Of a stretch of 64,000 nt of DNA, positions 22,835 through 55,725 are shown piece by piece. The notes beneath the pieces are model-generated. The model saw only the letters and a list, made by a program, of their open reading frames with translations, did not search any database and had not been told where the DNA came from. The stretch lies in IMG/VR virus record IMGVR_UViG_3300027834_000005, positions 62,001 through 126,000 of that record. One strand, given 5' to 3'. A program made the translations under genes and the position numbers. Numbering within the stretch: position 1 is the stretch's first letter; every line of letters begins with the position of its first letter.

Positions 22835-22980
22835 AATACGAATCATTCTCATTTGCGCCTGTAAACCGTAATGCGAATCATTCTCATTCTCATCTATAAC
22901 TATCAGGCAGGAGTGGTGTTTATCTCCTCGGTTATCCCAAGCCATGTAAGTATTATACCTATCCTCACGTAGAGTGCAAG
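22835..22980 (-). ncRNA. Non-coding cassette A (promoter, ACACCACTCCTG core, 2 Fur-like boxes)
   Basis: -10 at 22952-22957(-); core 22908-22919; Fur-like boxes 22835-22853 and 22870-22888. Confidence 0.55.
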
Positions 22981-39055: not shown

Positions 39056-39077
39056 CATTAACACACGGATAAATACA

Positions 39078-40889: not shown

Positions 40890-41135
40890 ATGGCCACACA
40901 AGTATTAAGCGTTAGGCAGATAGATGATGCGCTATGCGACCCAATCATGGTAGCGTCTTATCGTAAAGAACGCCACTTCGTTAGACTATCTTTTGATCCA
41001 CGTGATTGTAAGTTTGCTCTGGCCTATGGTATCACTCGCCTCAAGCAAGACTTTAAGTCATTCAAGCATGACGAGAAAGAAGCAGCCGTCACCATGTACA
41101 ATGATTTAGTGGAGAAATACAATGCCAGCATTTAA
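40890..41135 (+). CDS. Hypothetical early protein
   Basis: GAGGA RBS. Confidence 0.7.
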   Translation: MATQVLSVRQIDDALCDPIMVASYRKERHFVRLSFDPRDCKFALAYGITRLKQDFKSFKHDEKEAAVTMYNDLVEKYNASI

Positions 41136-41379
41136 AGCGAAAGATACCAAAGTACTTGAGCTAGCCAATCAAGCAATCAGTCAGTTCTGTAAAGAGACTG
41201 GAGTCATGGAGCCAACCGCTGGCTACGCTAATATATTGAGACGTGAATTAATTCATATCTTACTACAACAAGATGCCGCTACAAAAGCAGCTATCCTTGC
41301 TGACGCCACGGGCGGTGATGCAGACAGTTACCCAACCCTAACACAAACAATCAATAATTGTCAAGGCGGACTCGTTTGA
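41122..41379 (+). CDS. Hypothetical protein
   Basis: GGAG RBS. Confidence 0.65.
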   Translation: MPAFKAKDTKVLELANQAISQFCKETGVMEPTAGYANILRRELIHILLQQDAATKAAILADATGGDADSYPTLTQTINNCQGGLV

Positions 41380-41386
41380 GTTCGTT

Positions 41387-41402
41387 TGTTTCACGTGAAA
41401 CA
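41387..41402. promoter_or_regulatory. parS site (ParB binding)
   Basis: TGTTTCACGTGAAACA, perfect consensus. Confidence 0.85.
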
Positions 41403-41407
41403 TTGTA

Positions 41408-41516
41408 AACGATAATCATTCTCATTAGGGGATAGCGGACAGGAGTAGTGTTTATCTTCGCCTCCTCCAGCGCCTCTATCTGTAACCATTATACATCTCC
41501 CCCATTACATAGCAAG
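41408..41516 (-). ncRNA. Non-coding cassette B
   Basis: -10 at 41488-41493(-); core 41440-41451; Fur-like box 41408-41426; parS follows. Confidence 0.55.
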
Positions 41517-41611
41517 CATTTTATTCATTTAATTTAATTCATTATTCGCTTGACTTCACATGAGCTTAGAGTAGAATGGGAACCATATTAAATAGTTCTG
41601 AGGGGAACAAC

Positions 41612-42364
41612 ATGATAAACCAAGACACCATGAAAGCAATGATCAATCTATTCGGTAGACTACGTCCATTCGATTTACGTGATGCACGTGAAGATAGAGT
41701 TAACGCAGTCATGTGGTCAATCATTGAAGCATTCAACTGGAACGCCAATGGTAACGAAAACATTACGCAAATCCAACGTGCCATGATTAGCCACTTCGAC
41801 AACGACCTAATGTTACGCGCCTGTAAGTTTGCACGTGAGCGTATCTCCGAACTACACACTCATGCGTTCGATGCGTGTACGGTTGGCGGTGATGACTCAT
41901 ACAACGACTGCGTATCTCATGCTGTAGGTATGGGCGAAGACTATTTCAATAAAGCAATGGCAAATCCAGCCATTCTTAACAGCCTAGATTATAAAGAATC
42001 GTTTAGTTATGTATTATTCAGTGAGGCGAGCGATTTTGAAAAGTTTGATACACACTATCACAAACAACAAGCGTATATGCTTTGGGGTCAACTAAACTTC
42101 CACCACGACAGCTACAAGTCGGATAATGCTGGATTATGGGCAAAACTAGCAGTGCGCTTTGATGACGTGCTGGGTGCAATTGGTGAACAAAACGACACAC
42201 CAGATATGGACGCACTATGGTTAGCCGTTGGTGACTTGCAGAATAGAGAAGTATACAGTGAGCTATCTGGTTTCTGCTATAGCTATCCTAACATTCTTAA
42301 GGATATGGCCGAGTACTTGTTTGACTGGGACAAGCAAAAGAATACACAAAAAGAATTGTTTTAG
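41612..42364 (+). CDS. DUF4240-like protein
   Basis: GGDDSYNDCVSHAVGMGEDYFNKAMANP resembles the DUF4240 motif. Confidence 0.55.
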   Translation: MINQDTMKAMINLFGRLRPFDLRDAREDRVNAVMWSIIEAFNWNANGNENITQIQRAMISHFDNDLMLRACKFARERISELHTHAFDACTVGGDDSYNDCVSHAVGMGEDYFNKAMANPAILNSLDYKESFSYVLFSEASDFEKFDTHYHKQQAYMLWGQLNFHHDSYKSDNAGLWAKLAVRFDDVLGAIGEQNDTPDMDALWLAVGDLQNREVYSELSGFCYSYPNILKDMAEYLFDWDKQKNTQKELF

Positions 42365-42427
42365 TAGTTGACAACGAGTGTGACCGTGCTATGATGGTCA
42401 CACATTAAACGTTCTGAGGGGAACAAC

Positions 42428-42892
42428 ATGGCAGACCAAACGAATACATTAGTTATCAATCTTGGCGGCGACGAGCTTAATGATGAAGATAAGCGCATGT
42501 TATGCAACAACGTTGATTTTGCATTGGAACAGCAACGCTCTGAGGGTATGTTATCTACCAACCTAAGCCATGATGCTAATGGCGATCAGAAAGCGATTGA
42601 CTGGATAGACGTTGACTTCTTTACTCCAGCTCCTCCTAAGTCTAACACACTAACGGACGATAGCAAGTTCAAAGTATTCCAAAAAACATCTGGTCACTTT
42701 TTGACCGAATGTGTACCTGATAACTGGAATGATCTTGATGATACAGAATCGGATGATTTCTTAACTTCTCACTTAACCAGCGACTTAGAACATCACACAG
42801 CTAGCGATGTTTATAGCTTGATTGAAGACGCCGCCACTGTTACAATAGAGCTTATTGAAAGCAACACATTAACCTTTACTGAGGAGAAGTAA
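42428..42892 (+). CDS. Acidic hypothetical protein
   Basis: Family-1 leader; D/E-rich. Confidence 0.75.
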   Translation: MADQTNTLVINLGGDELNDEDKRMLCNNVDFALEQQRSEGMLSTNLSHDANGDQKAIDWIDVDFFTPAPPKSNTLTDDSKFKVFQKTSGHFLTECVPDNWNDLDDTESDDFLTSHLTSDLEHHTASDVYSLIEDAATVTIELIESNTLTFTEEK

Positions 42893-42893
42893 G

Positions 42894-43139
42894 ATGGGCG
42901 ATAAAAACTATGCAGTATTCGACATGTCCCGTGAGAACCAATTTGACGATGGTAATGGCAACGGCGTATCTCTTGAAGATCACGTCAGGTATGTAGACAA
43001 TTACATGGGGACGCCAGACTGCGGTATCTTCTGTGATACCTTAGCAGAAGCTTTTGAAGAAGCCAAGATGTTTAAGGAAGGCGCTGGCATTGTTGACCTT
43101 GAAGAAGGTAGCATTGTAGAAGTAACAGAAGCACAATAA
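42894..43139 (+). CDS. Acidic small protein
   Basis: GAGGAG RBS. Confidence 0.7.
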   Translation: MGDKNYAVFDMSRENQFDDGNGNGVSLEDHVRYVDNYMGTPDCGIFCDTLAEAFEEAKMFKEGAGIVDLEEGSIVEVTEAQ

Positions 43140-43207
43140 AACACTTGACGCCACTGTTATCCTATGCGATGATGGTGGTCTATTCAATAATAACTCTGGG
43201 AAGCAAC

Positions 43208-43894
43208 ATGAAAAAGCCATACGGATTCAAGCGAGCCTTTGCCTCGTTATCACTCTTACTCGTGCTAGTCATGCCATCTATTGCAATGGCAACCAACTGC
43301 GCATCACAAATCAATAACATCTCCGACCTACCCGACATTGCCAAGCAACAAATGATCGTAGAGTGCGAACAGAACAAGCTTAACGATGTGCGCAGTATCG
43401 TAGAGCCTGATATGTCCGCTGATGAAGCTGCTGACATGGCACAGAAGTGGGCGGGTGTAGCTAATGCGTTCCTCGGTGCAATCAATACGGTGGCCAAAGA
43501 CTTAGGCGTAACCATTAACGAATTCTTACCCACGCCAGCCGGTATACTTACCGCTGTCCTTATCACATGGGAAGTTATGGGCGATGACATAGGCGAGGTG
43601 GTTTCGTCAGTGGTTGGATGTAGTGCTTTCGTTATCCTCGGTTTCATTGTACTTAACATGGGCAGACGTTACTGTAAACGTCAACTTGTAACCAAAACAG
43701 AAACAGTACTCATTAAGGGCTGGTTTGGTAGAGAGAAACATGTACAGAAGGACACTTATTGTTCAATTAATGAACTAGACAGACACGGTGGCGGCAGTGA
43801 TTCTCCCTCGGATCACTCATGGTACTACATTACCGTACTGGTTACAACCGGAATAGGTCTGTCGTGTATCGCTATCGGTATTTTACAGTTATAG
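43208..43894 (+). CDS. Membrane protein
   Basis: Signal peptide plus about 3 TM segments. Confidence 0.75.
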   Translation: MKKPYGFKRAFASLSLLLVLVMPSIAMATNCASQINNISDLPDIAKQQMIVECEQNKLNDVRSIVEPDMSADEAADMAQKWAGVANAFLGAINTVAKDLGVTINEFLPTPAGILTAVLITWEVMGDDIGEVVSSVVGCSAFVILGFIVLNMGRRYCKRQLVTKTETVLIKGWFGREKHVQKDTYCSINELDRHGGGSDSPSDHSWYYITVLVTTGIGLSCIAIGILQL

Positions 43895-43917
43895 AATAGT
43901 CCGATTACATACCAAAC

Positions 43918-43942
43918 AAAAGCCACTCTTTAGTGGCTTTTT
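43918..43942 (+). terminator. Terminator
   Basis: aaaagccact-cttt-agtggcttttt. Confidence 0.7.
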
Positions 43943-43997
43943 CTGTTGACAGCGATTATACATTGTGTATAATGATACTCATCAACTGGAGAAGACC

Positions 43998-44651
43998 ATG
44001 CCAAACATAACAGCAATAGCAAAAGACATAGCATCAGTGATGATCACAGCAGAGACTGCAATGGGCAGTAGTGATTTAGGCGACTACTTACATGAGTGCG
44101 TAACTGACGAGTATTGGGGTATCAAGCTAAAGGCAGCAGCCAAGCCATGCCAAGACCTCATTGATAAGTGTTTAGCCATAGGTGCTATCAGTAACGACTC
44201 TAGTGTATGGATTGGGGACGCTGACGCCTATATCTGGGTAGAAGAGATTAAACCAACTAAGAGCTACCATACATTACGCCATGCACTAATCATCAAGAAC
44301 GTAGTGACGTGCGCAGAGAACAATGTATTCATCTATGATCTTGACAGTATGGATGATGATTTCTCAGCTACGTTCCATTGTGTGGCGGTAGAAGACTCCG
44401 AAGAAGTAATGCGCTATAATCCGCGCCAGTTCAATGATAACCGTGATTGGGAAAAAGCCACGCTCAAGACTTACCGCGACCATAACTTTACTTTTGGCTA
44501 TCGTGACTGCCGTGATAGAGGACATAGCTTCTTACTAAAGCATGGTTCATGTGAGAAGGCAACACCTCATGAAGTAAGATTTGCCTTACGTGAACTTATG
44601 TGGGCGTATAATTCCATAGTAGAGGCAGAAGATTACACGAAAAAGAACTAA
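43998..44651 (+). CDS. Hypothetical early protein
   Basis: Promoter and GGAGA RBS. Confidence 0.75.
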   Translation: MPNITAIAKDIASVMITAETAMGSSDLGDYLHECVTDEYWGIKLKAAAKPCQDLIDKCLAIGAISNDSSVWIGDADAYIWVEEIKPTKSYHTLRHALIIKNVVTCAENNVFIYDLDSMDDDFSATFHCVAVEDSEEVMRYNPRQFNDNRDWEKATLKTYRDHNFTFGYRDCRDRGHSFLLKHGSCEKATPHEVRFALRELMWAYNSIVEAEDYTKKN

Positions 44652-44678
44652 AAATAGCTTGACTTTTGAATCGTATCA

Positions 44679-44709
44679 TGTTATTATAACAGCTTCTGTT
44701 ATAATAACA
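44679..44709. repeat. Perfect 14-bp inverted repeat over the -10 box of the mom-like promoter
   Basis: tgttattataacag-ctt-ctgttataataaca. Confidence 0.7.
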
Positions 44710-44756
44710 GTTTATAAATTAGTTTACAGCATAGTCTAGGTGTGTTATAATAGCGC

Positions 44757-45380
44757 ATGATTAAATATACTGTAGAACAAATAGAAAGAAAAGATTGCGA
44801 ACCATACATAATAGGTATACACTACGCCAAACGATGGCCAAGTATCTCCTATGCGTATGGTTTATTTGCTGATGGCGACCTATGCGGGATTGTATCATAC
44901 GGCACACCACCTAGCGCACCACTCAAGCGCGGCATAGCAGGAGACGATTATAAGGATAAAATCCTTGAACTCAATCGATTATGCTTACTCCACAACAGAA
45001 AGAACGAAGCCAGTATACTTGTAGGCCAAAGCCTCAAGATGCTACCAAGGAATCGTATCATTGTATCTTTTGCCGACATAAGCCAAGGTCACACAGGCAC
45101 AGTATACCAAGCAACCAATTTTACATACTGCGGACTAAGCGCCAAGCGTACTGACTGGAAGGTGAAAGGCAAGGAACACTTACACGGCCAAACCATAGCA
45201 GACGAGTTCAGAGGCGTAAAGAACAGAGCACAGGCAATGCGCGACAAGTACGGTGATGACTTCTATCTGGCACCACGCCCACGTAAACATAGATACATCT
45301 ATTTCTGTGGTGGGAAGAACTTTAGAAAACATGCCATACGCGCACTAAAATATAAAGTAGAAGATTATCCCAAAAAGTAG
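44757..45380 (+). CDS. Mom-like (GNAT-fold) DNA adenine modification protein
   Basis: HYAKRWPS, LELNRL, IVSFAD..QGHTGTVYQATNF.YCG, RKHRYIYF. Confidence 0.75.
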   Translation: MIKYTVEQIERKDCEPYIIGIHYAKRWPSISYAYGLFADGDLCGIVSYGTPPSAPLKRGIAGDDYKDKILELNRLCLLHNRKNEASILVGQSLKMLPRNRIIVSFADISQGHTGTVYQATNFTYCGLSAKRTDWKVKGKEHLHGQTIADEFRGVKNRAQAMRDKYGDDFYLAPRPRKHRYIYFCGGKNFRKHAIRALKYKVEDYPKK

Positions 45381-45449
45381 TTGACATTAAATGTGACCAT
45401 GCTATTATGGTCACACATCAAACGAAACAAGTTCTGAGGGGAACACATC

Positions 45450-46019
45450 ATGGGCTATACAACTGAATTTACCGGCAAAATCGAAATCGTACCAGCTCTT
45501 AATGAGACTGAAATTAAGTACATCCAGCAATTCAATGACACACGTCGTATGGAACGTACCAACGGTGCATACTTTGTTGGCGGCACTGGCATGTGTGGTC
45601 AAGGTCAAGACGATGATATCATCAATTACAATCAGCCACCACAAGGCCAACCATCACTGTGGTGTCAGGTAACATGTTCAGACGATGGTAAGTATTTAGA
45701 ATGGGACGGCGGCGAGAAAGCATATAGCATGGAAATCTGGATGCTTTATATCATTAAACACTTCTTAGGTAAAGACCCAATTGCTAGACAGGTAAACAAA
45801 TCTTTTGGCTTCCTTAAAGGTCACATGCTTAATGGTACGCTAGCAGCCGAAGGCGAGAGCCACGATGATAACTGGCAGATCAGCGTTATTGATAACGTAG
45901 TGTACAAGCAAGAGCACGACGAAAGCAAGCTAGGTTTAGGCGAACTGGTACAGGTTGAACTTGAAGTAGGGCAACTGGCACTATCTAACTCACCCACCGG
46001 ATTATTAGAACACAGTTAA
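45450..46019 (+). CDS. Conserved phage hypothetical protein
   Basis: MGYTTEFTG..PSLWCQ..WDGGEK motif familiar from phage hypotheticals. Confidence 0.75.
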   Translation: MGYTTEFTGKIEIVPALNETEIKYIQQFNDTRRMERTNGAYFVGGTGMCGQGQDDDIINYNQPPQGQPSLWCQVTCSDDGKYLEWDGGEKAYSMEIWMLYIIKHFLGKDPIARQVNKSFGFLKGHMLNGTLAAEGESHDDNWQISVIDNVVYKQEHDESKLGLGELVQVELEVGQLALSNSPTGLLEHS

Positions 46020-46069
46020 GGCGGCGATTAAGTAGCGCCTTATATACTCAGACGAATTCATAAGCCTTT

Positions 46070-46098
46070 GCCCATCCCTAAAAAAGATGGGCTTTTTT
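46070..46098 (+). terminator. Terminator
   Basis: gcccatc...gatgggc followed by T6. Confidence 0.65.
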
Positions 46099-46162
46099 GT
46101 GTCTTACCTATTGACATTGTGTGTGTAGCACGTATAATTATCACATAACTAAGGGGCACGCC

Positions 46163-46699
46163 ATGAACATTCCATTATTTGATAAATTCCAAGCGCTAGT
46201 AGTAGAACATTACAATCCCAAACACATGCCCCTTACTAATTACCCTCGCGGTGATTGGGTAGACGACGAAACATTCATCTCCATAGCAGAAGGTTACTTG
46301 ACGTGGTTAGACAAAAACCTAGAGCGTTTAGTGGACAATGTAACCGCCATATATGAAGCAACTGGCTACGAGTCTGGATATTCCGCGCTAACCGAGAACT
46401 TATTATGGAAGCGTGAGATTATAATAGATCACCCTGAAAGAGCATACAGCCGTGAGAGTATAAAAGGCAACATATTAGAGAAGTCATTATCGCCATTATA
46501 TCACTTGTATCAGAATAAAGCATGGGGTAAGCGTGAGAAGTCAGAGAGGTTCGGGTTCACTGGCTCACTAGTAACATCTTCACTGAACGTAGAAGTAGAA
46601 GAAAGCGTCAGGCGAGGTAAGATGGACGTGTCTTATTCTTTCCATATTAGCATGAGTATTGGCAGTACTCACAGAGGCGTTATAGAAATAGCAGAATAA
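46163..46699 (+). CDS. Hypothetical early protein
   Basis: Promoter duplicated at 46703. Confidence 0.75.
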   Translation: MNIPLFDKFQALVVEHYNPKHMPLTNYPRGDWVDDETFISIAEGYLTWLDKNLERLVDNVTAIYEATGYESGYSALTENLLWKREIIIDHPERAYSRESIKGNILEKSLSPLYHLYQNKAWGKREKSERFGFTGSLVTSSLNVEVEESVRRGKMDVSYSFHISMSIGSTHRGVIEIAE

Positions 46700-46757
46700 A
46701 CCTTGACTTTGTGTGTGTGTAGCACGTATAATGATTACATCAACTAAGGGGAACACC

Positions 46758-47288
46758 ATGCAAGTAGCCATTTGGAACAACGATAAAGTCGAAGGCGAAA
46801 CATACGCTGAAGTACAAGAGAACGAAAAGGAAGAGAAAGGCACAGTGTCCTCTGTCCTTACACTACCAACAAATTCGATGTATGTCTTAAAGGATATACT
46901 GGAAGCTGTCTATAACGAAACTGACATTAGTCTGAAATGGGAAATCGTTGGTGATGTTGCGCCAGTAACACTACCAAAAGTTACCGATTTGCCAGTGCCC
47001 AACTTCATCAATGTTGAGCGTAATAACCGCAACGCTGCCATCGAGTTCATTAACGGTAGCTTAGCAAGAGCCATACTCAGTAAGATGAATAGCACTAACG
47101 TACGTCCTAAAGACGGCAAGTTCCACACTAGCATGAAAGATCCTGACGTGTCAAAAGAAGTTCTAGTCATCGTTAAGGAAATGGCTAAGGTGCTAGGCTA
47201 CACACTATCAGATAGCCACGATGGTGGCGGCATGTTCTACGTATTAGCCATTCAATGGCAAATAGATCTTGACACGCTAGAAGACTAG
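46758..47288 (+). CDS. Hypothetical early protein
   Basis: AAGGGGAAC RBS. Confidence 0.75.
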   Translation: MQVAIWNNDKVEGETYAEVQENEKEEKGTVSSVLTLPTNSMYVLKDILEAVYNETDISLKWEIVGDVAPVTLPKVTDLPVPNFINVERNNRNAAIEFINGSLARAILSKMNSTNVRPKDGKFHTSMKDPDVSKEVLVIVKEMAKVLGYTLSDSHDGGGMFYVLAIQWQIDLDTLED

Positions 47289-47325
47289 CGGTATTATAAC
47301 CACACACTCACATAGGGATACAATC

Positions 47326-47631
47326 ATGGCTAAGATGCAGATAATTACATGTTTATGTGGGTGTGGCGGTAAGAAAGCAGTACGCCAAGCTGATATTGAT
47401 CGCGGCTGGGGATTGTACTACAGTAAGCGCTGTAAGGCTAAGCACCAAGCCCAAGGGTTTAAGTCTCCAACCGCCAACAAGAAACGTTCTGTTAAGCACG
47501 ATAAGTATGACAGACAGTATACCAAGGGCGGTGTAGCAACTACATGGTATTTTGGTTCTGATCAAGAACACGACGACCTGATGGATGAAGCCGAAATGGG
47601 CTGGGATGCACACAAGGATATCACGTTATGA
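47326..47631 (+). CDS. Zn-finger-like phage protein
   Basis: CLCGCG..ADIDRGWG.YYSKRCKA. Confidence 0.7.
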   Translation: MAKMQIITCLCGCGGKKAVRQADIDRGWGLYYSKRCKAKHQAQGFKSPTANKKRSVKHDKYDRQYTKGGVATTWYFGSDQEHDDLMDEAEMGWDAHKDITL

Positions 47632-48125
47632 CTATCAATGCAACTATAAATTTTAAGCTTGATCTGTATGGCGATAATACGCATAGTTTCCTATCTAGGA
47701 TAGATATTTTATCTTACCCTCAAAACAAAGATATATGCGACATAATACGCGAGTATATCAGAGATGGCTTGACAGTAGAGTGCGAATACGTTAATGACAT
47801 TGACGGTCTATATGAGTACTACGTCCCTATATACTTTGAAGACGTGAAGCCAGAAGAGCTAAGCGATATAGCTATGAAAGCAGCTGATTCTATAGCTGAA
47901 GCGGTAGCAAGTTTTAAGAGCGAGTACCACGTTGATGAGTACTACAAAATATACGAACGCTTCGAGAAAGTATACACCGACTACATGATAGATGGCGAAA
48001 CTGTAATGTATGAGCGTTTGGCTGGCAAGGGGTATCGTCTGAGAAACTGGCAGAATGCAGAGAGCTATCTATATACACGTTTATTTTGCAAAAAGACCTT
48101 GACGCCACGTTCAGAGCTGGTATAG
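47628..48125 (+). CDS. Hypothetical protein
   Basis: ATGA coupling. Confidence 0.7.
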   Translation: MTINATINFKLDLYGDNTHSFLSRIDILSYPQNKDICDIIREYIRDGLTVECEYVNDIDGLYEYYVPIYFEDVKPEELSDIAMKAADSIAEAVASFKSEYHVDEYYKIYERFEKVYTDYMIDGETVMYERLAGKGYRLRNWQNAESYLYTRLFCKKTLTPRSELV

Positions 48126-48150
48126 TAGACACATAACTAAGGGGAACACT

Positions 48151-48315
48151 ATGAACATTGAACACTTCGTAAACGGCAAGAGCACAGGCACTATCACTCC
48201 AGACACCAAAGCATGGCGTGATCATTCCATCAACTTCCAAGCACGTAGTGATGCTCACTACCAACCATCGCGCCCGTCTAAAGTGACGTTTGTTGAGGTG
48301 CCGCGCAATGCCTAA
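48151..48315 (+). CDS. Small hypothetical protein (54 aa)
   Basis: AAGGGGAAC RBS; MNIEHFVNG. Confidence 0.6.
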   Translation: MNIEHFVNGKSTGTITPDTKAWRDHSINFQARSDAHYQPSRPSKVTFVEVPRNA

Positions 48316-48508
48316 TCTAATCGCATGTGTCGTGATGGCACTCTGTTTATTATTCAATCTAGTGCGCTGGTTAATGCTACCAGAGGACATACGCCTAGCT
48401 ATTGACATATTCATGCTGTTTGTTTTCGTGGAACTTTTTTTGACTTTCTGCTTCTTAATGAATTTTGATAAAGCTAAGAAATATATCTCGAAGTACTGCC
48501 GATCATAA
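48308..48508 (+). CDS. Small membrane protein
   Basis: Two hydrophobic segments. Confidence 0.55.
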   Translation: MPNLIACVVMALCLLFNLVRWLMLPEDIRLAIDIFMLFVFVELFLTFCFLMNFDKAKKYISKYCRS

Positions 48509-48514
48509 CAGTCT

Positions 48515-48579
48515 GAATAGCAAATGTAAATGCCATTTTTGAACCACATTTTTGAATGGCATTTTTGAATCTCATACCC
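48515..48579. repeat. 13-bp-period repeat array, copy 3
   Basis: gaatagcaaatgt aaatgccattttt gaaccacattttt gaatggcattttt gaatctcataccc. Confidence 0.75.
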
Positions 48580-48744
48580 GCGCCACACTCCCGCGCCACA
48601 CACGACACGTCAGTCACACGCGAACATATACTCGCACGAATACATACGTGCATATAATATCACACATTATATACATATAGCGCTTGACAACGTGTGTACC
48701 TATGCTATTATAGGCACACATTAACAAGTTCTGAGGGGAACACC

Positions 48745-49047
48745 ATGAGTACAACATCTACTAAGTCATTGCGCATTAGAACCTACACTGGTTATATTAA
48801 CACACAAGCCATCGTCATTGGCGAGCACGTAGCTACTAACACCTACATTGCCGCGAAAGGCATCATAGGCGGTCTGTGGGACGTAGACCATACCGAGGCA
48901 CAAGAGATTATCATGGGCGCTATCGTAGGCACTGAAGCGATACACAGAACTAGATTATGTAGTGATGGTGATGTAACAATGAGATTGATAGTGGATGTCA
49001 TAGAAACAGACGCCACTGAGATCAAAGATGAGTATGCATACGCATAG
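48745..49047 (+). CDS. Hypothetical early protein
   Basis: Family-1 leader. Confidence 0.75.
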   Translation: MSTTSTKSLRIRTYTGYINTQAIVIGEHVATNTYIAAKGIIGGLWDVDHTEAQEIIMGAIVGTEAIHRTRLCSDGDVTMRLIVDVIETDATEIKDEYAYA

Positions 49048-49106
49048 TCACACAGTCCACCATCATACCACACATGTAGTTATCCGCAACATGTTTATTC
49101 ATACAG

Positions 49107-49180
49107 TACTGGTTGGATATACAGTACTGGTTGGATATACAGTACTGGTTGGATATACAGTACTGGTTGGATATACAGTG
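49107..49180. repeat. Four tandem LexA SOS boxes (18-bp repeat)
   Basis: CTG-GTTGGATATA-CAG at 49109, 49127, 49145, 49163; reverse strand reads TACTGTATATCCAACCAGTA. Confidence 0.8.
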
Positions 49181-49189
49181 GATTTGGTA

Positions 49190-49283
49190 AACGCGAATCA
49201 TTCGCATTCGCATTCTCATTACCCAAATAGCAGGCAGGAGTGGTGTAGCTCTATTATACTAGCATTCACAACAACAACACAAG
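49190..49283 (-). ncRNA. Non-coding cassette C
   Basis: TTGTGT..TATAAT(-); core starts at predicted +1 (49246); Fur-like hexamers 49190-49220. Confidence 0.55.
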
Positions 49284-49481
49284 CTTTATTTCATCTAATT
49301 AAATATAAAATGAATGAATAAAAAGCTTTACATATACAGCCAGTTCTATAATATAGGTGGCACTTGTTTAGAACAACAAACAAAAAGAAAGACAAATAAA
49401 AGCTTGCAATACTCTTTCACTTGTCTATAATGAGAATCATCAAAACAAAAAAACAAAAACTTTTATATAACGGGCTTACTT

Positions 49482-50102
49482 ATGAACATTATCTCTTCTT
49501 TGAAAAAAGCAACATTGGCTAAAATCGAATCAGCACAGGCGAATGCAGCCATTACTAAACGCGCAAACGGCGCACGTATCACAGCGGGACAAGTGGCGGC
49601 AATCGCGGCAACTAAGCCAGCACTGGTTAAACTAACACAAGTCACGCCTGTAGCACTAGCAGCAGCCAACAAACAGCGCAACATTGTTAAGGTAGCACAA
49701 ACAGTGTGTATCTTGCCTAATGATTCGGACGTATACACAAGCGCCATTAAGCACACGGCAAAAGGTAGCGCCGAAGATATCGCAGCATATACGCCACGCG
49801 AAAGCAAGTATAATCATTGCGGTAGTGCTTATGCAGCGCTAACACTTAAATCAGATGATAGCAAGGAATATTTATATACAATTCAAGACAATTGTACAAA
49901 ATCTGTACTAGTTGACGCCGACACTGGCACAGTTTTAGAAAAAGCGCAAGTTGCTGAATTAATGACCAAATCAGCAGCCAAAAAATTGCTAGGTGATACC
50001 AGCGCAGAAAAAACCAACAAAACCTTTGACATTGAGCACGATGTATGCGTACGCACAATCAAGATGGAAAATGTTATTAAGATGGAAGAAGTATCCATCT
50101 AA
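49482..50102 (+). CDS. Hypothetical early protein (paralog of 37276..37839)
   Basis: Tandem promoters upstream; shared C-terminal motifs. Confidence 0.8.
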   Translation: MNIISSLKKATLAKIESAQANAAITKRANGARITAGQVAAIAATKPALVKLTQVTPVALAAANKQRNIVKVAQTVCILPNDSDVYTSAIKHTAKGSAEDIAAYTPRESKYNHCGSAYAALTLKSDDSKEYLYTIQDNCTKSVLVDADTGTVLEKAQVAELMTKSAAKKLLGDTSAEKTNKTFDIEHDVCVRTIKMENVIKMEEVSI

Positions 50103-50116
50103 TAGAACGCTAACAC

Positions 50117-50145
50117 AAAAGACTGGCATTGTCCAGTCTTTTTTT
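50117..50145. terminator. Bidirectional terminator
   Basis: aaaagactgg-cattgt-ccagtc followed by T-run; near-copy at 55192-55218. Confidence 0.75.
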
Positions 50146-50147
50146 AT

Positions 50148-50251
50148 ATACGAATGATTCTCAATTGCAAATGATTATCATTCTCATTACCCAAATACCA
50201 TGCAGGAGTGGTGTAAGGTCATTATACTACCAACCACAACAACAACACAAG
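50148..50251 (-). ncRNA. Non-coding cassette D
   Basis: -10 at 50221-50226(-); core 50203-50214; Fur box 50170-50188; runs into the bidirectional terminator. Confidence 0.6.
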
Positions 50252-50374
50252 CTTTATTTCATCTAAATTAAATATAAAAAGAATGAATAAAAAGCTTTAC
50301 ATACTCAGCTCGTTCTATATAATGATTACATCAGCTAAGGGATTACCTCTTAGCACCCTTTGAGAGTATTTGCT

Positions 50375-50926
50375 ATGTCTTCACGTAGAATTAATGTATC
50401 AGTTGAACAGTTAGCCACAGAAGCGAAACAGAACGAATTAGCCCGTGTGGACGCAATTAATGCAACTCGTAACATGCTCAATAAGTTACAGCCCTTAATT
50501 GCTGCGCGTATAGCCAAAGGTATTAAGTTTAAAAACGACGGTAGCCCATACGCTAAAGACGCCAAAGATATTGCCGCTATCGTAGCCAATGCGGTTGGTG
50601 GTGAAAAAATACATGTTATGGTAATGTATAAAGAAATCCCTAACCCAATTAGACCTATTCCTTCGACTATACGCATACAGGCAAGGGCGCACTATAGCAA
50701 AATTAGCTCAATATATAACGACTTGAACGGAAAACCGGACGTAAGCGGCCAGAGCTGCGAGGAAAATGCCTATGTGGGTGTTGCTGAGTCTTTCGAGTAC
50801 AAAGATAAACCGCTTTTATCAGTGGATCAAGTAGTAAAGGCTAAAGCCAGAATCACAGAAATAGACGACCTGATAAGTGCATTAAATGGCGAGCGTTCCG
50901 CACTTGCGCACTCTATTGATCTTTAA
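50375..50926 (+). CDS. Hypothetical early protein
   Basis: Family-2 promoter. Confidence 0.75.
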   Translation: MSSRRINVSVEQLATEAKQNELARVDAINATRNMLNKLQPLIAARIAKGIKFKNDGSPYAKDAKDIAAIVANAVGGEKIHVMVMYKEIPNPIRPIPSTIRIQARAHYSKISSIYNDLNGKPDVSGQSCEENAYVGVAESFEYKDKPLLSVDQVVKAKARITEIDDLISALNGERSALAHSIDL

Positions 50927-51018
50927 TACACATTAATACTTTACATACTCAGCTAGTTCTGTATAATGATTACATCAGCTAGGGGATTGTCCCCTAGCAC
51001 CTTTTAAGAGTATTTGCC

Positions 51019-51312
51019 ATGACTACTGTCGCTGCTATTGCCACCGCTACGCCTAAAGATATGATGATAAAACATGTTAACTTTTGTTTCCCTGTCGCTT
51101 GTGCCCGTGATGGACAAGATTTCTTTAAGCACGCATCAGACACTATACACTTAAACTCTAAAAATGTCATCTTGAAGTTTACGCCGTTGTATGATAGCAA
51201 GACGCGCACTGTCGAGAAAGTATTCGATAACTTTCTAAAAAGCCACGGGTGGTACTTAGAAGCGTACACGGTAACAGAACTAATCTTAAGAAAACGCATA
51301 ACACACAATTAA
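51019..51312 (+). CDS. Hypothetical early protein
   Basis: Family-2 promoter. Confidence 0.7.
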   Translation: MTTVAAIATATPKDMMIKHVNFCFPVACARDGQDFFKHASDTIHLNSKNVILKFTPLYDSKTRTVEKVFDNFLKSHGWYLEAYTVTELILRKRITHN

Positions 51313-51321
51313 ACCGTTCTA

Positions 51322-51337
51322 TGTTTCACGTGAAACA
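51322..51337. promoter_or_regulatory. parS site
   Basis: TGTTTCACGTGAAACA, perfect consensus. Confidence 0.85.
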
Positions 51338-51357
51338 TTACCCACTATATGTGGGTA

Positions 51358-51439
51358 AATGCGTATCATTCTCATTAAGTAAATAGCGGACAGGAGTGGT
51401 GTAAGGTCATTATACTACCAACCGCAACAACAACACAAG
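51358..51439 (-). ncRNA. Non-coding cassette E
   Basis: -10 at 51409-51414(-); core 51391-51402; Fur-like box 51358-51376; parS follows. Confidence 0.6.
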
Positions 51440-51528
51440 CTTTTTCTTTATTATCTTTTTGCACAATAAAGCTTTACATACTCAGCTAGATCTGTATAAT
51501 TCAGTAATGTTTATAAGGTTCTATGTGT

Positions 51529-51939
51529 ATGAAAACTACAGACAAGCAAACAAATATATCAGGTTTTTGGCGTATGTGCGCGAGCATCATATTTGACGTT
51601 GTTGCGCACGACGGTGGCGGCTTATCATACTCTTATTACCACGGCAGACAGTTAAGGTCTGGATGTATGCATGATCCTAAGCTATTCACGCAGAATTACA
51701 CACAGTTTAACGTAGATAGCGCAGAAAAAGACCTTGAAGCATTTATTAATGTATTCAATACTTTACATGCTGCCAATGACGCGCTAACAGAGGAAAAACA
51801 ATTTATATTTGATAAAGTTGACACACTAATAACTTTACTGTATAGGGCAGGCGTGGATTATGATGGTGTTACACTAGACATTGACTATAGAAAAGACCAC
51901 CCAACGTATAGCAGAAATAGTAAGTTTTCTTTTCAATAA
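51529..51939 (+). CDS. Hypothetical early protein
   Basis: Family-2 promoter. Confidence 0.7.
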   Translation: MKTTDKQTNISGFWRMCASIIFDVVAHDGGGLSYSYYHGRQLRSGCMHDPKLFTQNYTQFNVDSAEKDLEAFINVFNTLHAANDALTEEKQFIFDKVDTLITLLYRAGVDYDGVTLDIDYRKDHPTYSRNSKFSFQ

Positions 51940-52021
51940 AGCTTTACATACTCAGCTAGATCTGTATAATTGTTAACAAGTCGGGGGCATACAGCAACCG
52001 ACACAGTTTAGAGTATTTGTT

Positions 52022-52399
52022 ATGACTTTTTCTATCGTTAGTTCTACTGCAAAAACCATCTTCACCCCTAGTGCATCTACTCCGCGCCATGAACACGACT
52101 GCGACTGTTGTACATTTACTGGTACTTACGGCGACTATGATCTTTATCATTGCCCTAAGAGCGATGAGGGCACGATCATAGCACGTTTCGGCATTGATGG
52201 CGATTACTATAGCCGCCCGTTATCCTTATGTAAAAGTTCAATGAGCTGTGATCATCCATTGTCTGCCGCCCTTGCTGCATATAAGGAGCACACAGAACAA
52301 CCCGTAACAATTGGCGATCTTATCAAGCGACAAATGGACGAGTCAACCTTTAAAGAAGAACATCTAGCGCATTTTAATAAATGTCTTAATAGGGAATAA
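52022..52399 (+). CDS. His/Cys-motif hypothetical protein
   Basis: PRHEHDCDCC..DLYHC. Confidence 0.75.
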   Translation: MTFSIVSSTAKTIFTPSASTPRHEHDCDCCTFTGTYGDYDLYHCPKSDEGTIIARFGIDGDYYSRPLSLCKSSMSCDHPLSAALAAYKEHTEQPVTIGDLIKRQMDESTFKEEHLAHFNKCLNRE

Positions 52400-52486
52400 A
52401 AACCCTTTACATACTCAGCTAGTTCTGTATAATTGTTAACAAGTCGGGGGCATACAGCAACCGACACCTTTTTGAGAGTATTTACC

Positions 52487-52663
52487 ATGGCTACATTAGT
52501 TGCTGCGAAACAAGTTAAAGCTGGCGATCTTATCATGGACAAGGGCACAAAGCGACAAGTGTCTATGGTTCGCGTATCAGGTGGCGGCGTCGATATCTAT
52601 TGTGTATGTGGCGAGCATTTAGACAAGATAGCCGATCAACAAGTATCATTGGTGGAGGTGTAA
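52487..52663 (+). CDS. Small hypothetical protein
   Basis: Family-2 leader. Confidence 0.65.
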   Translation: MATLVAAKQVKAGDLIMDKGTKRQVSMVRVSGGGVDIYCVCGEHLDKIADQQVSLVEV

Positions 52664-52665
52664 TC

Positions 52666-52857
52666 ATGGCTAGTGTATACGGTGTTAATAGTCCTCGTAG
52701 TGGTCACATAGATGTAAGCAATACGGAACGTGGTGCAAAGAACTACGCAACGCGCAACGGCTACACAGAAGTAACAGAGCGCAACACAAATCACATGACG
52801 GCTATTATCATAGCTGAAAAACATGATGGTATGTGGTGCAAACCTTATTCATTATAG
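52666..52857 (+). CDS. Small hypothetical protein
   Basis: GGAGG RBS. Confidence 0.65.
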   Translation: MASVYGVNSPRSGHIDVSNTERGAKNYATRNGYTEVTERNTNHMTAIIIAEKHDGMWCKPYSL

Positions 52858-52943
52858 TAGTTGACATACTCAGTCAGTTCTATATAATTGTTAACAAGTC
52901 GGGGGCATACAGCAACCGACACAAATCAAAAACGGGATTTATC

Positions 52944-53198
52944 ATGGCTTCATACAAACTTTCTACTATTGCCGCTATCTACGCACTACAACAAGCCATC
53001 GTTGCCGATAAAGCACCTTGCACCCTAACGCAACATTACTTTGCCAAGCAAGTGGTACAGATTGCCGAGCAAGTAGATAACGAGTTTATCATTGATACGC
53101 CTTTAGAGGAAGTCAAAGCAAGCGTTCAATGCGCGTATGATTTTGCTAAGGTTGTGGCGGATAGTGGCGGCCTTGTATACACTCAGGCGAGTGTATAA
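52944..53198 (+). CDS. Small hypothetical protein
   Basis: Family-2 leader. Confidence 0.65.
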   Translation: MASYKLSTIAAIYALQQAIVADKAPCTLTQHYFAKQVVQIAEQVDNEFIIDTPLEEVKASVQCAYDFAKVVADSGGLVYTQASV

Positions 53199-53269
53199 CT
53201 ATGGCTATCACGTTATCAGTTATCATGGTTCTTTCTTTTCCTTTAGTCTTTAGCCTGTAGGGGTTTATT

Positions 53270-53614
53270 ATGCTATTAGTCATTAATGCACTAGAACAAG
53301 TCAAAAGCGGCACTGATGGCGCGGCCACTATAATCTCTCATATTAACGCGCACCCACTCAAAGCGCTTATTGCTGAAGGGCTTTATGAAAAGGTACGGGA
53401 ACGCGATAACATAGCAGATAAACGCTATTCATTACAGGCACGCCGTAAAAAGGCCGACAAGTACACAAACACCGACGCTATGGATAAAGACATAGAAGCG
53501 TTAGGGTTGCAAGAAGATGCCCTAGATGGCGATATAGAGGCCATAGTGCATGAATCTAAGAAAATGCTAAACTTTGAAATTGCATTGATTGTAAACGAAT
53601 TCTCAAAATATTAA
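53270..53614 (+). CDS. Hypothetical coiled-coil protein
   Basis: 114-aa ORF. Confidence 0.65.
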   Translation: MLLVINALEQVKSGTDGAATIISHINAHPLKALIAEGLYEKVRERDNIADKRYSLQARRKKADKYTNTDAMDKDIEALGLQEDALDGDIEAIVHESKKMLNFEIALIVNEFSKY

Positions 53615-53632
53615 ATAAGCCTTTGGGGGGAC

Positions 53633-53711
53633 TTGTGTCCCCTCTTTTTTTGTGTATAATAGAACCACACCACTCCTGCCTGCTATTCCACTAATGAGAA
53701 TGATTATCATT
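53633..53711 (+). ncRNA. Non-coding cassette F
   Basis: TTGTGT-N16-TATAAT; core 53667-53678 at predicted +1; Fur box AATGAGAATGATTATCATT at 53693-53711. Confidence 0.6.
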
Positions 53712-53716
53712 CACAC

Positions 53717-53732
53717 TGTTCCACGTGAAACA
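53717..53732. promoter_or_regulatory. parS site
   Basis: TGTTCCACGTGAAACA fits TGTTNCACGTGAAACA. Confidence 0.8.
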
Positions 53733-53756
53733 TAAACTAACACGCAATCAACTCTA

Positions 53757-53878
53757 AATGAGAATGATTCCCAACAACTGATAGCAGACAGGAGTAGTGT
53801 TTGCCTCCTAGCTCCGCAGCTAGCCCCAATCCCTTATCTCTTAATACCTATTATAATGATCTGAATACATAACGCAAG
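53757..53878 (-). ncRNA. Non-coding cassette G (converges on F)
   Basis: -10 at 53850-53855(-); core 53789-53800; partial Fur-like box at 53757. Confidence 0.55.
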
Positions 53879-54116
53879 CATTATTTCACCTAAATTAAAT
53901 ACAAAATTAGATGATTATATAGTTGACACTAACAGCAGAATGATTAATAATAGCTTCACTGTTTAGGCAAGCCCTAACAGCGCTAAAACAGATATGAAAT
54001 TATCTGAAAATAAAACAAGTAATCGCTTGACTCTATAATCACTAAGCGATACTATATAACAACTGAAACCAATAACGAGTTTCGGACAAAGCCCCAAAGG
54101 GGCAAAGGCTATTATT

Positions 54117-55172: not shown

Positions 55173-55234
55173 GCCCTAACACCTAACACGATAAGGCTGG
55201 CATTGTCCAGCCTTTTTTACGTCTATTGTAATAG

Positions 55235-55554
55235 TTATCCACACCCTGTGCATAACCTGTTAGTAATACTTATCCCCTACCTTATCCACAATCCTATAGT
55301 TATCCACAACCACTGCGCTATTATAGTGCACGACCATGCACCATAGGGGGGCACCCCCCTACCCCTGCCCCTATGCACACGGGTGGCGGCATGTCAAGGG
55401 ATAACTTATGCACAATTGTACACAGAGTTACACACAATATAGCGGTTTTAGCGAAAGTCAAGGGATAACTAGCACTATTTCTGTGCATAAGCCTGTGGAT
55501 AAGAAAAAATAGTTATCACCAGGGGTCCTGTGTATATGTATAACCTGTGGATAA
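55235..55554. promoter_or_regulatory. Cluster of DnaA boxes
   Basis: TTATCCACA at 55235, 55282, 55300, 55494(-), 55546(-); TTATGCACA at 55247(-), 55406, 55482(-); further 1-mismatch boxes. Confidence 0.85.
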
Positions 55555-55652
55555 CTTAGGGGCGACCTAGCCAGCGGCCCAATTTTTTTGCCCCCAGACC
55601 CCCCCCATGGTAAAAATTTTTCCCAGAAAATTTTCCGACCCTCCTACCCCCC

Positions 55653-55725
55653 AACCCTCGGTAAACCCTTGGTGAACCCTTGGTAAACCCTTGGGCGACG
55701 TAGTCGCTACCCTCGGTAAACCTTG
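55653..55725. repeat. 11-bp direct repeats (island right boundary)
   Basis: aaccctcggta aacccttggtg aacccttggta aacccttgggc, preceded by C-runs and A/T tracts. Confidence 0.7.

What the first reader, a model, noticed from the sequence alone, without database searches (positions are those of the whole stretch)
41387..53732. Three canonical chromosomal parS sites in a lytic phage
Seen: TGTTTCACGTGAAACA at 41387 and 51322, and TGTTCCACGTGAAACA at 53717. Each is intergenic and 5-20 bp from a Fur-like box. Three 16-mers are not plausibly chance. Known: this is the universal ParB/Spo0J site, and ParB spreads from it and loads SMC. Enterobacteria lack it, so the host is more likely Vibrio/Alteromonadales/Pseudomonas-like. 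Inference: hijack of host ParABS/SMC for positioning, for shielding DNA, or for disrupting host segregation.
Basis: partly seen in the sequence, partly recalled or inferred. Interest (0 to 1): 0.8.

Follow-up and report, generated by a model that had tools for sequence, protein, structure and literature searches.

The report
Host-type parS sites in jumbo phage
A 347-kb marine jumbo phage carries three exact copies of the bacterial chromosome "centromere" (parS) beside a cluster of DnaA boxes, with no ParB gene found in the 102 kb examined, so it most likely borrows the host's own segregation protein, as the small Bacillus phage phi29 is known to do.

Summary
Two perfect TGTTTCACGTGAAACA (41387, 51322) and one TGTTCCACGTGAAACA (53717) are intergenic and far beyond chance. 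No other site within 2 mismatches exists in the window or in about 38 kb of extra flank. The window is part of a 347-kb marine metagenomic jumbo phage, a distant relative of PA5oct and RaK2. Each parS lies 5-24 bp from a 19-bp palindromic operator. That operator belongs to a cassette repeated seven times: a sigma70-like promoter, a conserved 20-mer, then the operator. 1.5 kb right of parS3 is a cluster of eight DnaA boxes, five of them perfect. No ParB or ParA domain was found in about 102 kb around the sites; about 245 kb of the genome was not seen. Relatives keep the cassette but lack parS and the DnaA-box cluster. The operator resembles a Fur box, but PA5oct has a related one, so a phage-encoded repressor is equally possible. 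Host-type parS in a virulent phage is already known: phi29 has five, bound by host Spo0J, plus Spo0A boxes. My best reading is that host ParB, and probably DnaA, are recruited to an origin-like region for positioning or carriage of the unintegrated genome. This is a new variant of a known kind. Function is untested.

The parts
41387..41402 (.). parS1, perfect palindrome TGTTTCACGTGAAACA, 8 nt after the stop of the upstream gene
51322..51337 (.). parS2, perfect palindrome, 10 nt after the stop of the upstream gene; followed by an 8-bp-stem hairpin and then the operator
53717..53732 (.). parS3, TGTTCCACGTGAAACA (the permitted T/C variant at position 5), between two convergent cassettes
41408..41426 (.). 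19-bp palindromic operator (Fur-box-like) of cassette m41432
51358..51376 (.). operator of cassette m51383
53693..53711 (.). operator of the rightward cassette m53667; overlaps a 16/19 match to the Fur consensus at 53696-53714
53757..53775 (.). degenerate operator of the leftward cassette m53781
41432..41516 (-). cassette m41432: -35 CTTGCT (41516-41511), -10 TATAAT (41493-41488), ~35-nt insert, conserved 20-mer (41451-41432); fires towards operator and parS1
51383..51439 (-). cassette m51383: -35 CTTGTG (51439-51434), -10 TATAAT (51414-51409), 20-mer (51402-51383); fires towards operator and parS2
53632..53686 (+). cassette m53667: -35 CTTGTG (53632-53637, inside a terminator stem), -10 TATAAT (53655-53660), 20-mer (53667-53686); fires rightward into operator and parS3
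53781..53878 (-). cassette m53781: -35 CTTGCG (53878-53873), -10 TATAAT (53855-53850), insert, 20-mer (53800-53781); fires leftward into operator and parS3
55173..55706 (.). non-coding convergent intergenic region with eight DnaA boxes: TTATCCACA at 55235+, 55282+, 55300+, 55494-, 55546-; TTATGCACA at 55247-, 55406+, 55482-. Origin-like or a DnaA sink
49185..49283 (-). cassette m49227 without parS; the parS position is taken by a second operator and an 18-bp x4.4 tandem repeat (49101-49179)
50150..50251 (-). cassette m50195 without parS (two operators; a 16/19 Fur-consensus match at 50167-50185)
22835..22980 (-). cassette m22900 without parS (two operators), facing a repeat-rich non-coding stretch 22190-22830

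Best explanation
The three 16-mers are working loading sites for the host's chromosomal ParB. With the DnaA-box cluster 1.5 kb to the right, they make the boundary between the early genes and the structural genes look like a bacterial origin region (DnaA boxes plus origin-proximal parS). After injection, host ParB already present in the cell would bind parS and spread as CTP-dependent clamps over roughly 41-56 kb. This gives the unintegrated phage genome a partition complex that host ParA can position and segregate. That matters when lytic development is slowed or held back (carrier state or pseudolysogeny), presumably through the operator-bound repressor of the neighbouring cassettes. This is the strategy shown for phi29, where host Spo0J-parS acts together with host Spo0A boxes at early promoters. 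Shown here: exact sites, their clustering, their regulatory context, the adjacent DnaA boxes, and the absence of a nearby ParB gene. Inferred: binding by host ParB, spreading, and the biological purpose.
For: (1) The sites are exact canonical parS and the only variation is at the degenerate position 5; chance is negligible. (2) The C at position 5 of parS3 would break a hairpin pair, so conservation follows the ParB consensus rather than an RNA structure. (3) No ParB or ParA Pfam domain occurs in any called gene or in any ORF of 179 aa or more from window -19 kb to +65 kb, nor in the ORFs of L131 that were scanned, which reach 83 kb. A ParB that reads the canonical site would be a canonical, Pfam-detectable ParB. 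(4) The sites are confined to 12.3 kb; none within 2 mismatches occurs elsewhere in the ~102 kb examined. (5) Five perfect and three TTATGCACA DnaA boxes lie in a 535-bp non-coding region 1.5 kb from parS3, against 0.85 perfect boxes expected in the whole window. This is a second host chromosome-maintenance protein targeted in the same place. (6) Precedent: phi29 has five parS sites used by host Spo0J to segregate the phage genome, plus host Spo0A boxes at early promoters (PMC2731898). (7) In IMG/VR, canonical parS occurs in more than 119 viral contigs. Position 5 is T 115, C 38, G 3, A 2, which is biological and not random. About 20 of these contigs are phi29-like, others are different tailed phages, and none of the 119 loci (1.07 Mb) encodes a protein with the ParB GERRxRA motif. 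(8) The retrievable relative L133 keeps the cassettes and L132 only operator-like sites; both lack parS, which suggests a recent host-specific acquisition rather than a conserved phage ParB/parS pair. (9) The nearest cultured relative, PA5oct, persists in 21 of 30 resistant clones as a presumed episome or carrier state (PMC6950013). (10) The marine origin fits hosts that have ParABS (presence of ParABS in such hosts is general knowledge).
Against: No binding data exist and the host is unknown. About 245 kb of the genome was not examined, so a phage ParB/ParA pair may exist. The three sites are probably copies of one cassette (I4), so only one origination event needs explaining. PA5oct infects a ParB-bearing host yet has no parS or DnaA-box cluster in its syntenic 50 kb, so the trait is not needed by the lineage. 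The DnaA-box region has no clear AT-rich unwinding element, so it may not be an origin. The position of the sites 50-125 nt downstream of cassette promoters suggests a transcriptional role instead. A Mom-like modification enzyme is encoded between the sites; if it modifies the CACGT core it could block ParB (the Mom target specificity is from memory).
Confidence: 0.45

Rival explanations
1. Regulatory use: ParB (host or phage) loaded at parS acts as a roadblock or silencer for the cassette promoters that fire into it and for neighbouring early promoters, perhaps together with the operator-bound repressor. This would resemble KorB clamps cooperating with KorA on plasmid RK2, or ParB silencing around P1 parS.
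For: Every parS lies 50-125 nt downstream of a cassette promoter and 5-24 bp from its operator, and two cassettes converge on parS3. In other cassettes the same position holds a second operator or tandem repeats, and in relative L133 three copies of ACCGTTCGTCGG. The slot therefore looks like a plug-in place for DNA-binding proteins. The KorB/KorA and P1 silencing analogies are from general knowledge.
Against: Chromosomal ParB is not generally a strong transcriptional repressor. No transcript data exist (no RNA run was listed). This reading does not explain the adjacent DnaA-box cluster.
Confidence: 0.2
2. The phage encodes its own ParB, and perhaps ParA, elsewhere in the unseen 245 kb, and is a phage-plasmid with dispersed centromeres like N15. 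The sites would then serve a phage partition system.
For: Only about 30% of the genome was examined. Phage-plasmids with dispersed centromere sites exist (N15; general knowledge). The DnaA-box cluster is reminiscent of P1 oriR. The PA5oct lineage shows persistence.
Against: There is no ParB or ParA within 40-60 kb on either side, whereas partition operons normally adjoin their centromere. Mobile-element ParBs normally use a private parS to avoid cross-talk with the chromosome, and these sites are exactly the chromosomal consensus. Relatives lack parS. No integrase, repressor or Rep gene was seen in the window.
Confidence: 0.15
3. Sabotage by titration: as the phage DNA replicates, hundreds of parS and DnaA-box copies soak up host ParB and DnaA. 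This would stop host origin segregation and new rounds of host replication during a purely lytic cycle.
For: Sites for two host origin proteins lie together, and each site would be multiplied by phage copy number. The DnaA-box region lacks a clear unwinding element, like the datA sink (the datA analogy is general knowledge).
Against: Three sites are few for a sink. Host segregation matters little within one lytic cycle. No precedent was found in the papers searched.
Confidence: 0.12
4. The palindrome is bound by some other protein, or has no function, and merely coincides with parS, having been copied with the cassette.
For: The copies are related by duplication. The cassette works without it in four of seven cases.
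Against: A 16/16 match to a specific consensus has a chance of about 1e-5 per window. It is kept at 15-16 of 16 while the flanking spacer diverged, and the only change is at the degenerate position. In any ParB-bearing host the site would be bound whatever its 'purpose'.
Confidence: 0.06

Closest known systems
phi29-family parS sites used by host Spo0J (Meijer et al. 2005, as described in PMC2731898)
   Same: The phage is presumed virulent and no own ParB was found in the part examined. It has several canonical chromosomal parS sites. Binding sites resembling those of a host global regulator sit next to early promoters. The proposed outcome is the same: deferred lysis plus host-driven segregation of the phage genome.
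   Different: phi29 is a 19-kb protein-primed podovirus of a spore-former, and segregation is into the prespore. Here the phage is a 347-kb jumbo myovirus-type phage from marine samples with Gram-negative-type relatives and no link to sporulation. The partner regulator box is Fur-like, not Spo0A. The sites sit inside a promoter cassette and beside a DnaA-box cluster.
Bacterial chromosomal ParABS (origin-proximal parS clusters)
   Same: Identical 16-bp sequence; a few sites clustered within about 15 kb of a DnaA-box cluster.
   Different: No parAB genes were found alongside. The replicon is a virus. The DnaA-box region lacks an obvious unwinding element.
Phage-plasmid partition (P1 parABS beside oriR; N15 dispersed sopC-like centromeres near lytic promoters)
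   Same: Centromere-like palindromes lie in intergenic regulatory regions of a phage genome. In P1, DnaA boxes lie near the partition locus.
   Different: Those elements encode their own ParA/ParB and use private centromere sequences. Here no par genes were found in 102 kb and the sequence is the host chromosomal consensus.
RK2 KorB-OB / KorA-OA network
   Same: A ParB-family site is paired at short distance with a second palindromic operator near promoters.
   Different: OB is a different sequence. KorB and KorA are plasmid-encoded. There is no evidence here of a KorA-like partner.
Host transcription-factor sites in virulent phages for 'lytic deferment' (CtrA boxes in alphaproteobacterial phages, PMC9437464)
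   Same: A virulent phage reads host state through host DNA-binding proteins.
   Different: A different factor is involved, and no segregation component was described there.

Membership tests
Chromosomal-type parS (ParB/Spo0J site) | 16-bp palindrome matching TGTTNCACGTGAAACA | tested here: met
   Two 16/16 perfect palindromes and one T-to-C variant at the degenerate position.
Chromosomal-type parS (ParB/Spo0J site) | Bound by a canonical ParB, which then spreads with CTP | not testable with these tools
   Needs EMSA, ChIP or a clamp-loading assay.
Chromosomal-type parS (ParB/Spo0J site) | Clustered near a DnaA-dependent origin | tested here: inconclusive
   Eight DnaA boxes lie at 55235-55554, 1.5-14 kb from the sites, but no clear AT-rich unwinding element was found.
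Self-encoded type I partition locus (P1/N15/plasmid-like) | parA-parB operon on the same replicon, normally adjacent to the centromere | tested here: not met
   No ParB or ParA domain from window -19 kb to +65 kb, nor in the scanned ORFs reaching 83 kb. The remaining ~245 kb was not examined, so absence from the whole replicon is not proven.
phi29-type exploitation of host ParB | Virulent phage with several host-type parS and no ParB of its own | tested here: inconclusive
   The sites are present and no ParB was found in 30% of the genome. Lifestyle is inferred only from distant relatives.
phi29-type exploitation of host ParB | Host global-regulator boxes at early promoters that suppress the lytic cycle | tested here: inconclusive
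   Fur-box-like operators sit beside each parS. However, PA5oct has a diverged version, so the binder may be phage-encoded.
phi29-type exploitation of host ParB | Segregation into a spore of a sporulating host | not testable with these tools
   The host is unknown. Relatives infect Gram-negative bacteria, so this feature is probably not shared.
Fur box | 19-bp AT-rich palindrome close to GATAATGATAATCATTATC, overlapping a promoter | tested here: inconclusive
   16/19 matches at 23005, 50167 and 53696. The operator lies at about +25 to +45 of the cassette promoter, not over its -35/-10.
KorB/OB-type regulatory ParB network | ParB-family repressor and partner repressor encoded by the element | tested here: not met
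   No such genes in the region examined (same calls as above).
oriC-type origin | DnaA-box cluster plus an AT-rich DUE or DnaA-trios | tested here: inconclusive
   The box cluster is present; AT content is 25-65% with no long AT-rich block.

The most novel reading that the evidence does not exclude
This jumbo phage carries a miniature mimic of a bacterial chromosome origin region, made of a DnaA-box cluster plus three origin-proximal parS, with no Rep or Par genes of its own. It can therefore replicate at low copy and be partitioned entirely by host DnaA and ParABS as a silent episome. That would be a genetically encoded pseudolysogeny module for a 'virulent' giant phage. The many orphan parS clusters in other IMG/VR phages would then mean that hitch-hiking on host ParB is widespread beyond phi29.
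Probability: 0.25. Interest if true: 0.85.

Novelty: new variant of a known kind. Interest (0 to 1): 0.62.

Why it matters
Pseudolysogeny and carrier states of virulent, especially jumbo, phages are observed often (for example PA5oct) but have no known inheritance mechanism. So far the only worked-out case of a virulent phage using host ParB is phi29 in sporulating Bacillus. Here is a giant marine phage with exact host centromeres beside host-initiator boxes and regulated promoter cassettes. It would extend that principle to non-sporulating hosts and to a very different phage type, and it gives three precise sites to mutate. The capped IMG/VR scan also suggests that orphan host-type parS clusters are common in viral contigs, a pattern I did not find described in the papers searched.

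Tried and rejected
(1) Near-identity search of 41000-54200 against INPHARED phages found no match, so no annotated genome could be used. (2) My first cassette pattern had the wrong spacer and found nothing, wasting one IMG/VR scan. The corrected 20-mer scan found only this phage plus one coding chance hit, L002. (3) The cassette pattern found nothing in genome contigs, so there is no isolate, prophage or plasmid form and no host clue. In JGI metagenomes it found only this phage plus chance hits. (5) Walking the genome in 10-kb steps reached window -19 kb and +83 kb. I stopped because upstream is an array of small genes without annotation and downstream is the structural module with a 3999-aa gene. 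(6) No RNA run was listed, so promoter direction and transcripts are untested. (7) read laying on four marine-sediment and viral runs showed ~90% relatives only as 150-1000-nt fragments. Conservation of parS in them could not be read: one X4 contig diverges right after the operator at 53714, and another matches through parS2 to 51344. (8) I rejected an RNA-hairpin or terminator reading of the palindrome, because there is no U-run and the parS3 variant breaks a pair. (9) The CRP, TyrR, PurR and Cra operator consensus sequences (from memory) do not fit. (10) I rejected SlmA-site identity for the 18-bp tandem repeat, since only the AGTACT core is shared. (11) My 'ParB candidates' in IMG/VR loci (L050, L062) have no Pfam ParB domain. 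(12) Pfam and PHROGs scans of the small genes flanking the sites found nothing informative.


Full report
1. The observation. A search for TGTTNCACGTGAAACA with up to two mismatches finds exactly three sites in the 64-kb window. They are 41387-41402 and 51322-51337 (perfect palindromes) and 53717-53732 (TGTTCCACGTGAAACA). Shuffles give 0.23 matches, and none of 100 shuffles reaches the observed number. At 40% G+C the chance of one perfect palindrome in the window is about 2e-5 (my arithmetic). All three sites are intergenic by ORF listing and by independent gene calls on public assemblies of the same phage. It is a 19-bp palindrome, AATGAGAAT-N-ATTCTCATT, present eight times at up to 3 mismatches against 0.02 expected. 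It lies 5, 20, 5 and 24 bp from the parS sites. The E. coli Fur consensus at up to 3 mismatches hits three times against 0.05 expected, twice on these operators.

2. What the DNA is. The window is 100% identical to positions 62001-126000 of IMGVR_UViG_3300027834_000005, a 347,232-bp contig. The same phage was assembled independently in ENA (347,153 bp), JGI (410 kb) and Logan data. The runs holding it are marine or marine-sediment metagenomes. There is no near match among 50,697 deposited phage genomes. A 225-aa structural protein is 42% identical to that of Pseudomonas jumbo phage PA5oct and 37% identical to RaK2-like phages. The layout matches PA5oct: a long run of small early genes on the + strand, then, on the - strand, a tail fibre, the 225-aa protein and a giant virion protein of about 3900-4000 aa. 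The parS sites lie in the last 14 kb of the early block.

3. Anatomy around the sites. Each parS is attached to a repeated cassette, of which the window has seven copies: 22900, 41432, 49227, 50195, 51383, 53667 (inverted) and 53781. An alignment of the seven (A1) shows four parts. First, an invariant CTTG within a -35-like hexamer. Second, 16-18 bp further on, an invariant TATAAT. Third, after either 0 or about 45 nt, a conserved 20-mer ACACYACTCCTGYCYGCTAT. Fourth, 5-6 nt later, the operator. One of these promoters is also picked up by the consensus scan (TTGCTA-16-TATAAT). In relative L133 the same cassette has a perfect TTGACA and TATAAT. The cassette is therefore a sigma70-type promoter firing towards the operator. 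Beyond the operator comes a variable slot. It holds parS in four cassettes (two of them share parS3 and converge on it), a second operator in two, and a second operator plus a perfect 18-bp x4.4 tandem repeat in one. Six cassettes point against the flanking + strand genes. The parS sites sit at about +50 to +125 from the predicted starts. [parS + 5 bp + operator] at site 1 is an 89% inverted copy of the same unit at site 3, so the sites spread with the cassette. Within these copies parS stayed at 15-16 of 16 while the 5-bp spacer changed. The one change is at the consensus's degenerate position and would break an RNA hairpin pair. The conservation therefore follows the ParB consensus and not an RNA fold.

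4. A second host-type signal. A scan for the DnaA box TTATCCACA gave six perfect matches against 0.85 expected. Five of them lie within 320 bp at 55235-55554, on both strands. With TTATGCACA included, there are eight boxes in the 535-bp non-coding gap between the last early gene (DUF932, ending at 55172) and the first - strand gene (ending at 55707). This is 1.5 kb from parS3. The region has G/C-rich palindromes and an 11-bp repeat but no long AT-rich block, so whether it is an origin or a DnaA sink is open. Only 1 of 119 parS-bearing IMG/VR loci has four or more DnaA boxes within 500 bp.

5. Is there a phage ParB? No ParB or ParA domain appears in the precomputed Pfam hits of all called genes from window -19 kb to +65 kb. 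None appears in my own scans of every window ORF of 179 aa or more and of the larger ORFs in the flanks. The only recognisable early genes are Mom-like, RadC, DUF932, GP88, DUF6927, a methyltransferase-like protein and MORN-repeat paralogues. The flanks contain no further parS, operator, 20-mer or DnaA box. About 245 kb of the genome could not be reached with the tools, so a distant phage ParB is not excluded.

6. Relatives. Three comparisons were possible.
- L133 is a 10.4-kb ENA contig whose DUF932 protein is 68% identical. It has four cassettes with perfect operators but no parS within two mismatches. Upstream of its DUF932 gene, where this phage has parS3, it has three copies of ACCGTTCGTCGG.
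- L132 is an 80-kb MAG contig (55% identical DUF932). It has operator-like sites next to 37-bp repeats, no parS and no DnaA-box cluster.
- The syntenic first 50 kb of PA5oct has no parS, no DnaA-box cluster and no Fur-consensus match. It does have a related palindrome, AATAAGAAT-N-ATTCTTATT, in its early intergenic gaps.
Two conclusions follow. The operator is a trait of the phage lineage that varies between phages, which fits a phage-encoded repressor at least as well as host Fur. The parS sites and the DnaA boxes are recent additions in this phage, which fits adaptation to host proteins better than an old phage ParB/parS pair.

7. What is known. phi29, a virulent Bacillus phage, carries five parS sites. 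Host Spo0J uses them to segregate the infecting genome into the prespore, while host Spo0A boxes at early promoters suppress the lytic cycle (PMC2731898, citing Meijer et al. 2005, which is not held). I met this precedent from the data. About 20 of the first 119 IMG/VR loci carrying canonical parS are phi29-like by capsid, connector and packaging-ATPase homology. In those 119 loci the degenerate position is T 115, C 38, G 3, A 2, which is far from random. Twenty-four loci have two to five sites. Some belong to other tailed phages, such as L035 with five sites between the terminase genes. No ORF in the 1.07 Mb has the ParB GERRxRA motif. Orphan host-type parS therefore seems common in viral contigs. 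Host transcription-factor boxes that defer lysis are also described for CtrA in alphaproteobacterial phages (PMC9437464). PA5oct itself persists in 21 of 30 resistant clones as a presumed episome or carrier state (PMC6950013).

8. Mechanism. The best-supported reading (0.45) is that host ParB loads at the three sites and, with DnaA at the neighbouring boxes, makes this part of the phage genome behave like a chromosomal origin region. This would allow positioning and inheritance of the unintegrated genome when lysis is deferred. The site identity, clustering, context and lack of a nearby ParB gene are shown. Binding, spreading and purpose are inferred. The rivals are:
- a KorB-like regulatory or roadblock role at the cassette promoters (0.2);
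- a phage-encoded ParB elsewhere in the genome, making this a phage-plasmid (0.15);
- titration of host ParB and DnaA as host sabotage (0.12);
- coincidence or binding by some other protein (0.06).
It would not apply if the host uses MukBEF (general knowledge).

9. Verdict. The novelty class is a new variant of a known kind: the phi29 principle appears in a giant marine phage, combined with a DnaA-box cluster and a promoter cassette. Interest is 0.62. The case is well defined and directly testable, has a real precedent, and carries a more novel possible reading (an origin-mimic episome module) at about 0.25.

Noticed in passing
window 55173-55706: Cluster of eight host-type DnaA boxes (five perfect TTATCCACA) in the non-coding gap between the early and structural gene blocks. 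It also holds GTCAAGGGATAAC x2, a GGGGGGCACCCCCC palindrome and an 11-bp x3.8 repeat. It may be an origin or a DnaA sink.
   Followed up: partly
window 22835-22980, 41408-41516, 49185-49283, 50150-50251, 51358-51439, 53632-53711, 53757-53878: Seven copies of a regulatory cassette: sigma70-like promoter, conserved 20-mer ACACYACTCCTGYCYGCTAT (contains an anti-SD-like CUCCU if transcribed), then a palindromic operator. Six fire antisense to the neighbouring genes. The role of the 20-mer is unknown.
   Followed up: partly
window 49101-49179: Perfect 18-bp x4.4 tandem repeat ATACAGTACTGGTTGGAT (contains the palindrome CAGTACTG) in the slot where other cassettes carry parS. A 12-nt gap in the ENA assembly (L126) relative to the window falls at this repeat.
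   Followed up: no
window 22190-23000: About 800 bp of non-coding, repeat-rich DNA (37-bp x2.4, 13-bp x3.3, 12-bp x2.3) at the end of the paralogue array, followed by short - strand genes with duplicated upstream regions (23260, 23670). It could be another origin or a regulatory hub.
   Followed up: no
window 1-22186 and at least 19 kb upstream (L129, L145): A very long array of more than 90 small (about 100-150 aa) + strand genes forming several paralogous families, with conserved motifs including MORN_2 repeats and an EEDKFELCLKHGHMEF-like motif. None has an assigned function.
   Followed up: no
window 30167-48748: Highly stereotyped early promoters with a palindrome between -35 and +1 and a fixed leader and RBS (…GGTTACACATTAA…GTTCTGAGGGGAAC…ATG), 8-12 copies. 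A second promoter family (TTTACATACTCAGCTAGNTCTGTATAAT) drives tiny transcription units at 49.3-53 kb. They resemble mobile promoter cassettes.
   Followed up: no
window 44757-45380: Mom-like DNA modification gene (Pfam 2e-40) between parS1 and parS2. The Mu Mom target S-A-S-N-Y (from memory) would include the CACGT core of parS, so modification might gate ParB binding.
   Followed up: no
window 31989-32468, 54117-55172, 31035-31574: RadC, DUF932 and a methyltransferase-like gene sit in the early block, a set typical of plasmid leading regions and anti-defence islands.
   Followed up: no
window 38979-39055 and 39222-39298: Two phage tRNA genes, Arg(TCT) and Met(CAT).
   Followed up: no
window 22228-22270, 40796-40832, 48529-48570: 13-bp tandem repeats (AATGGCATTTTTG-like, about 3 copies) just upstream of promoters at three places. 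They are probably sites for yet another regulator.
   Followed up: no
There is a strong T/C preference at position 5, clusters of 2-5 sites occur in phi29-like and other tailed phages (for example L035 between the terminase genes), and no ORF in the flanks has the ParB GERRxRA motif.
   Followed up: partly
L133 4943, 8481-8565: The relative phage has ACCGTTCGTCGG repeats (x3 upstream of its DUF932 gene) where this phage has parS3. The binder is unknown.
   Followed up: no
L146 (PA5oct) 27470-33800: PA5oct early intergenic gaps carry a related operator (half-site AATTCTTATTTGCA; palindrome AATAAGAAT-N-ATTCTTATT), so the operator is a trait of this jumbo-phage lineage.
   Followed up: partly
window 63461 onward (L130, L131): A 3999-aa - strand gene and a neighbouring 1342-aa gene, with a baseplate-spike (Phage_base_V) protein beyond. 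The 3999-aa gene is the counterpart of PA5oct's giant virion protein.
   Followed up: no
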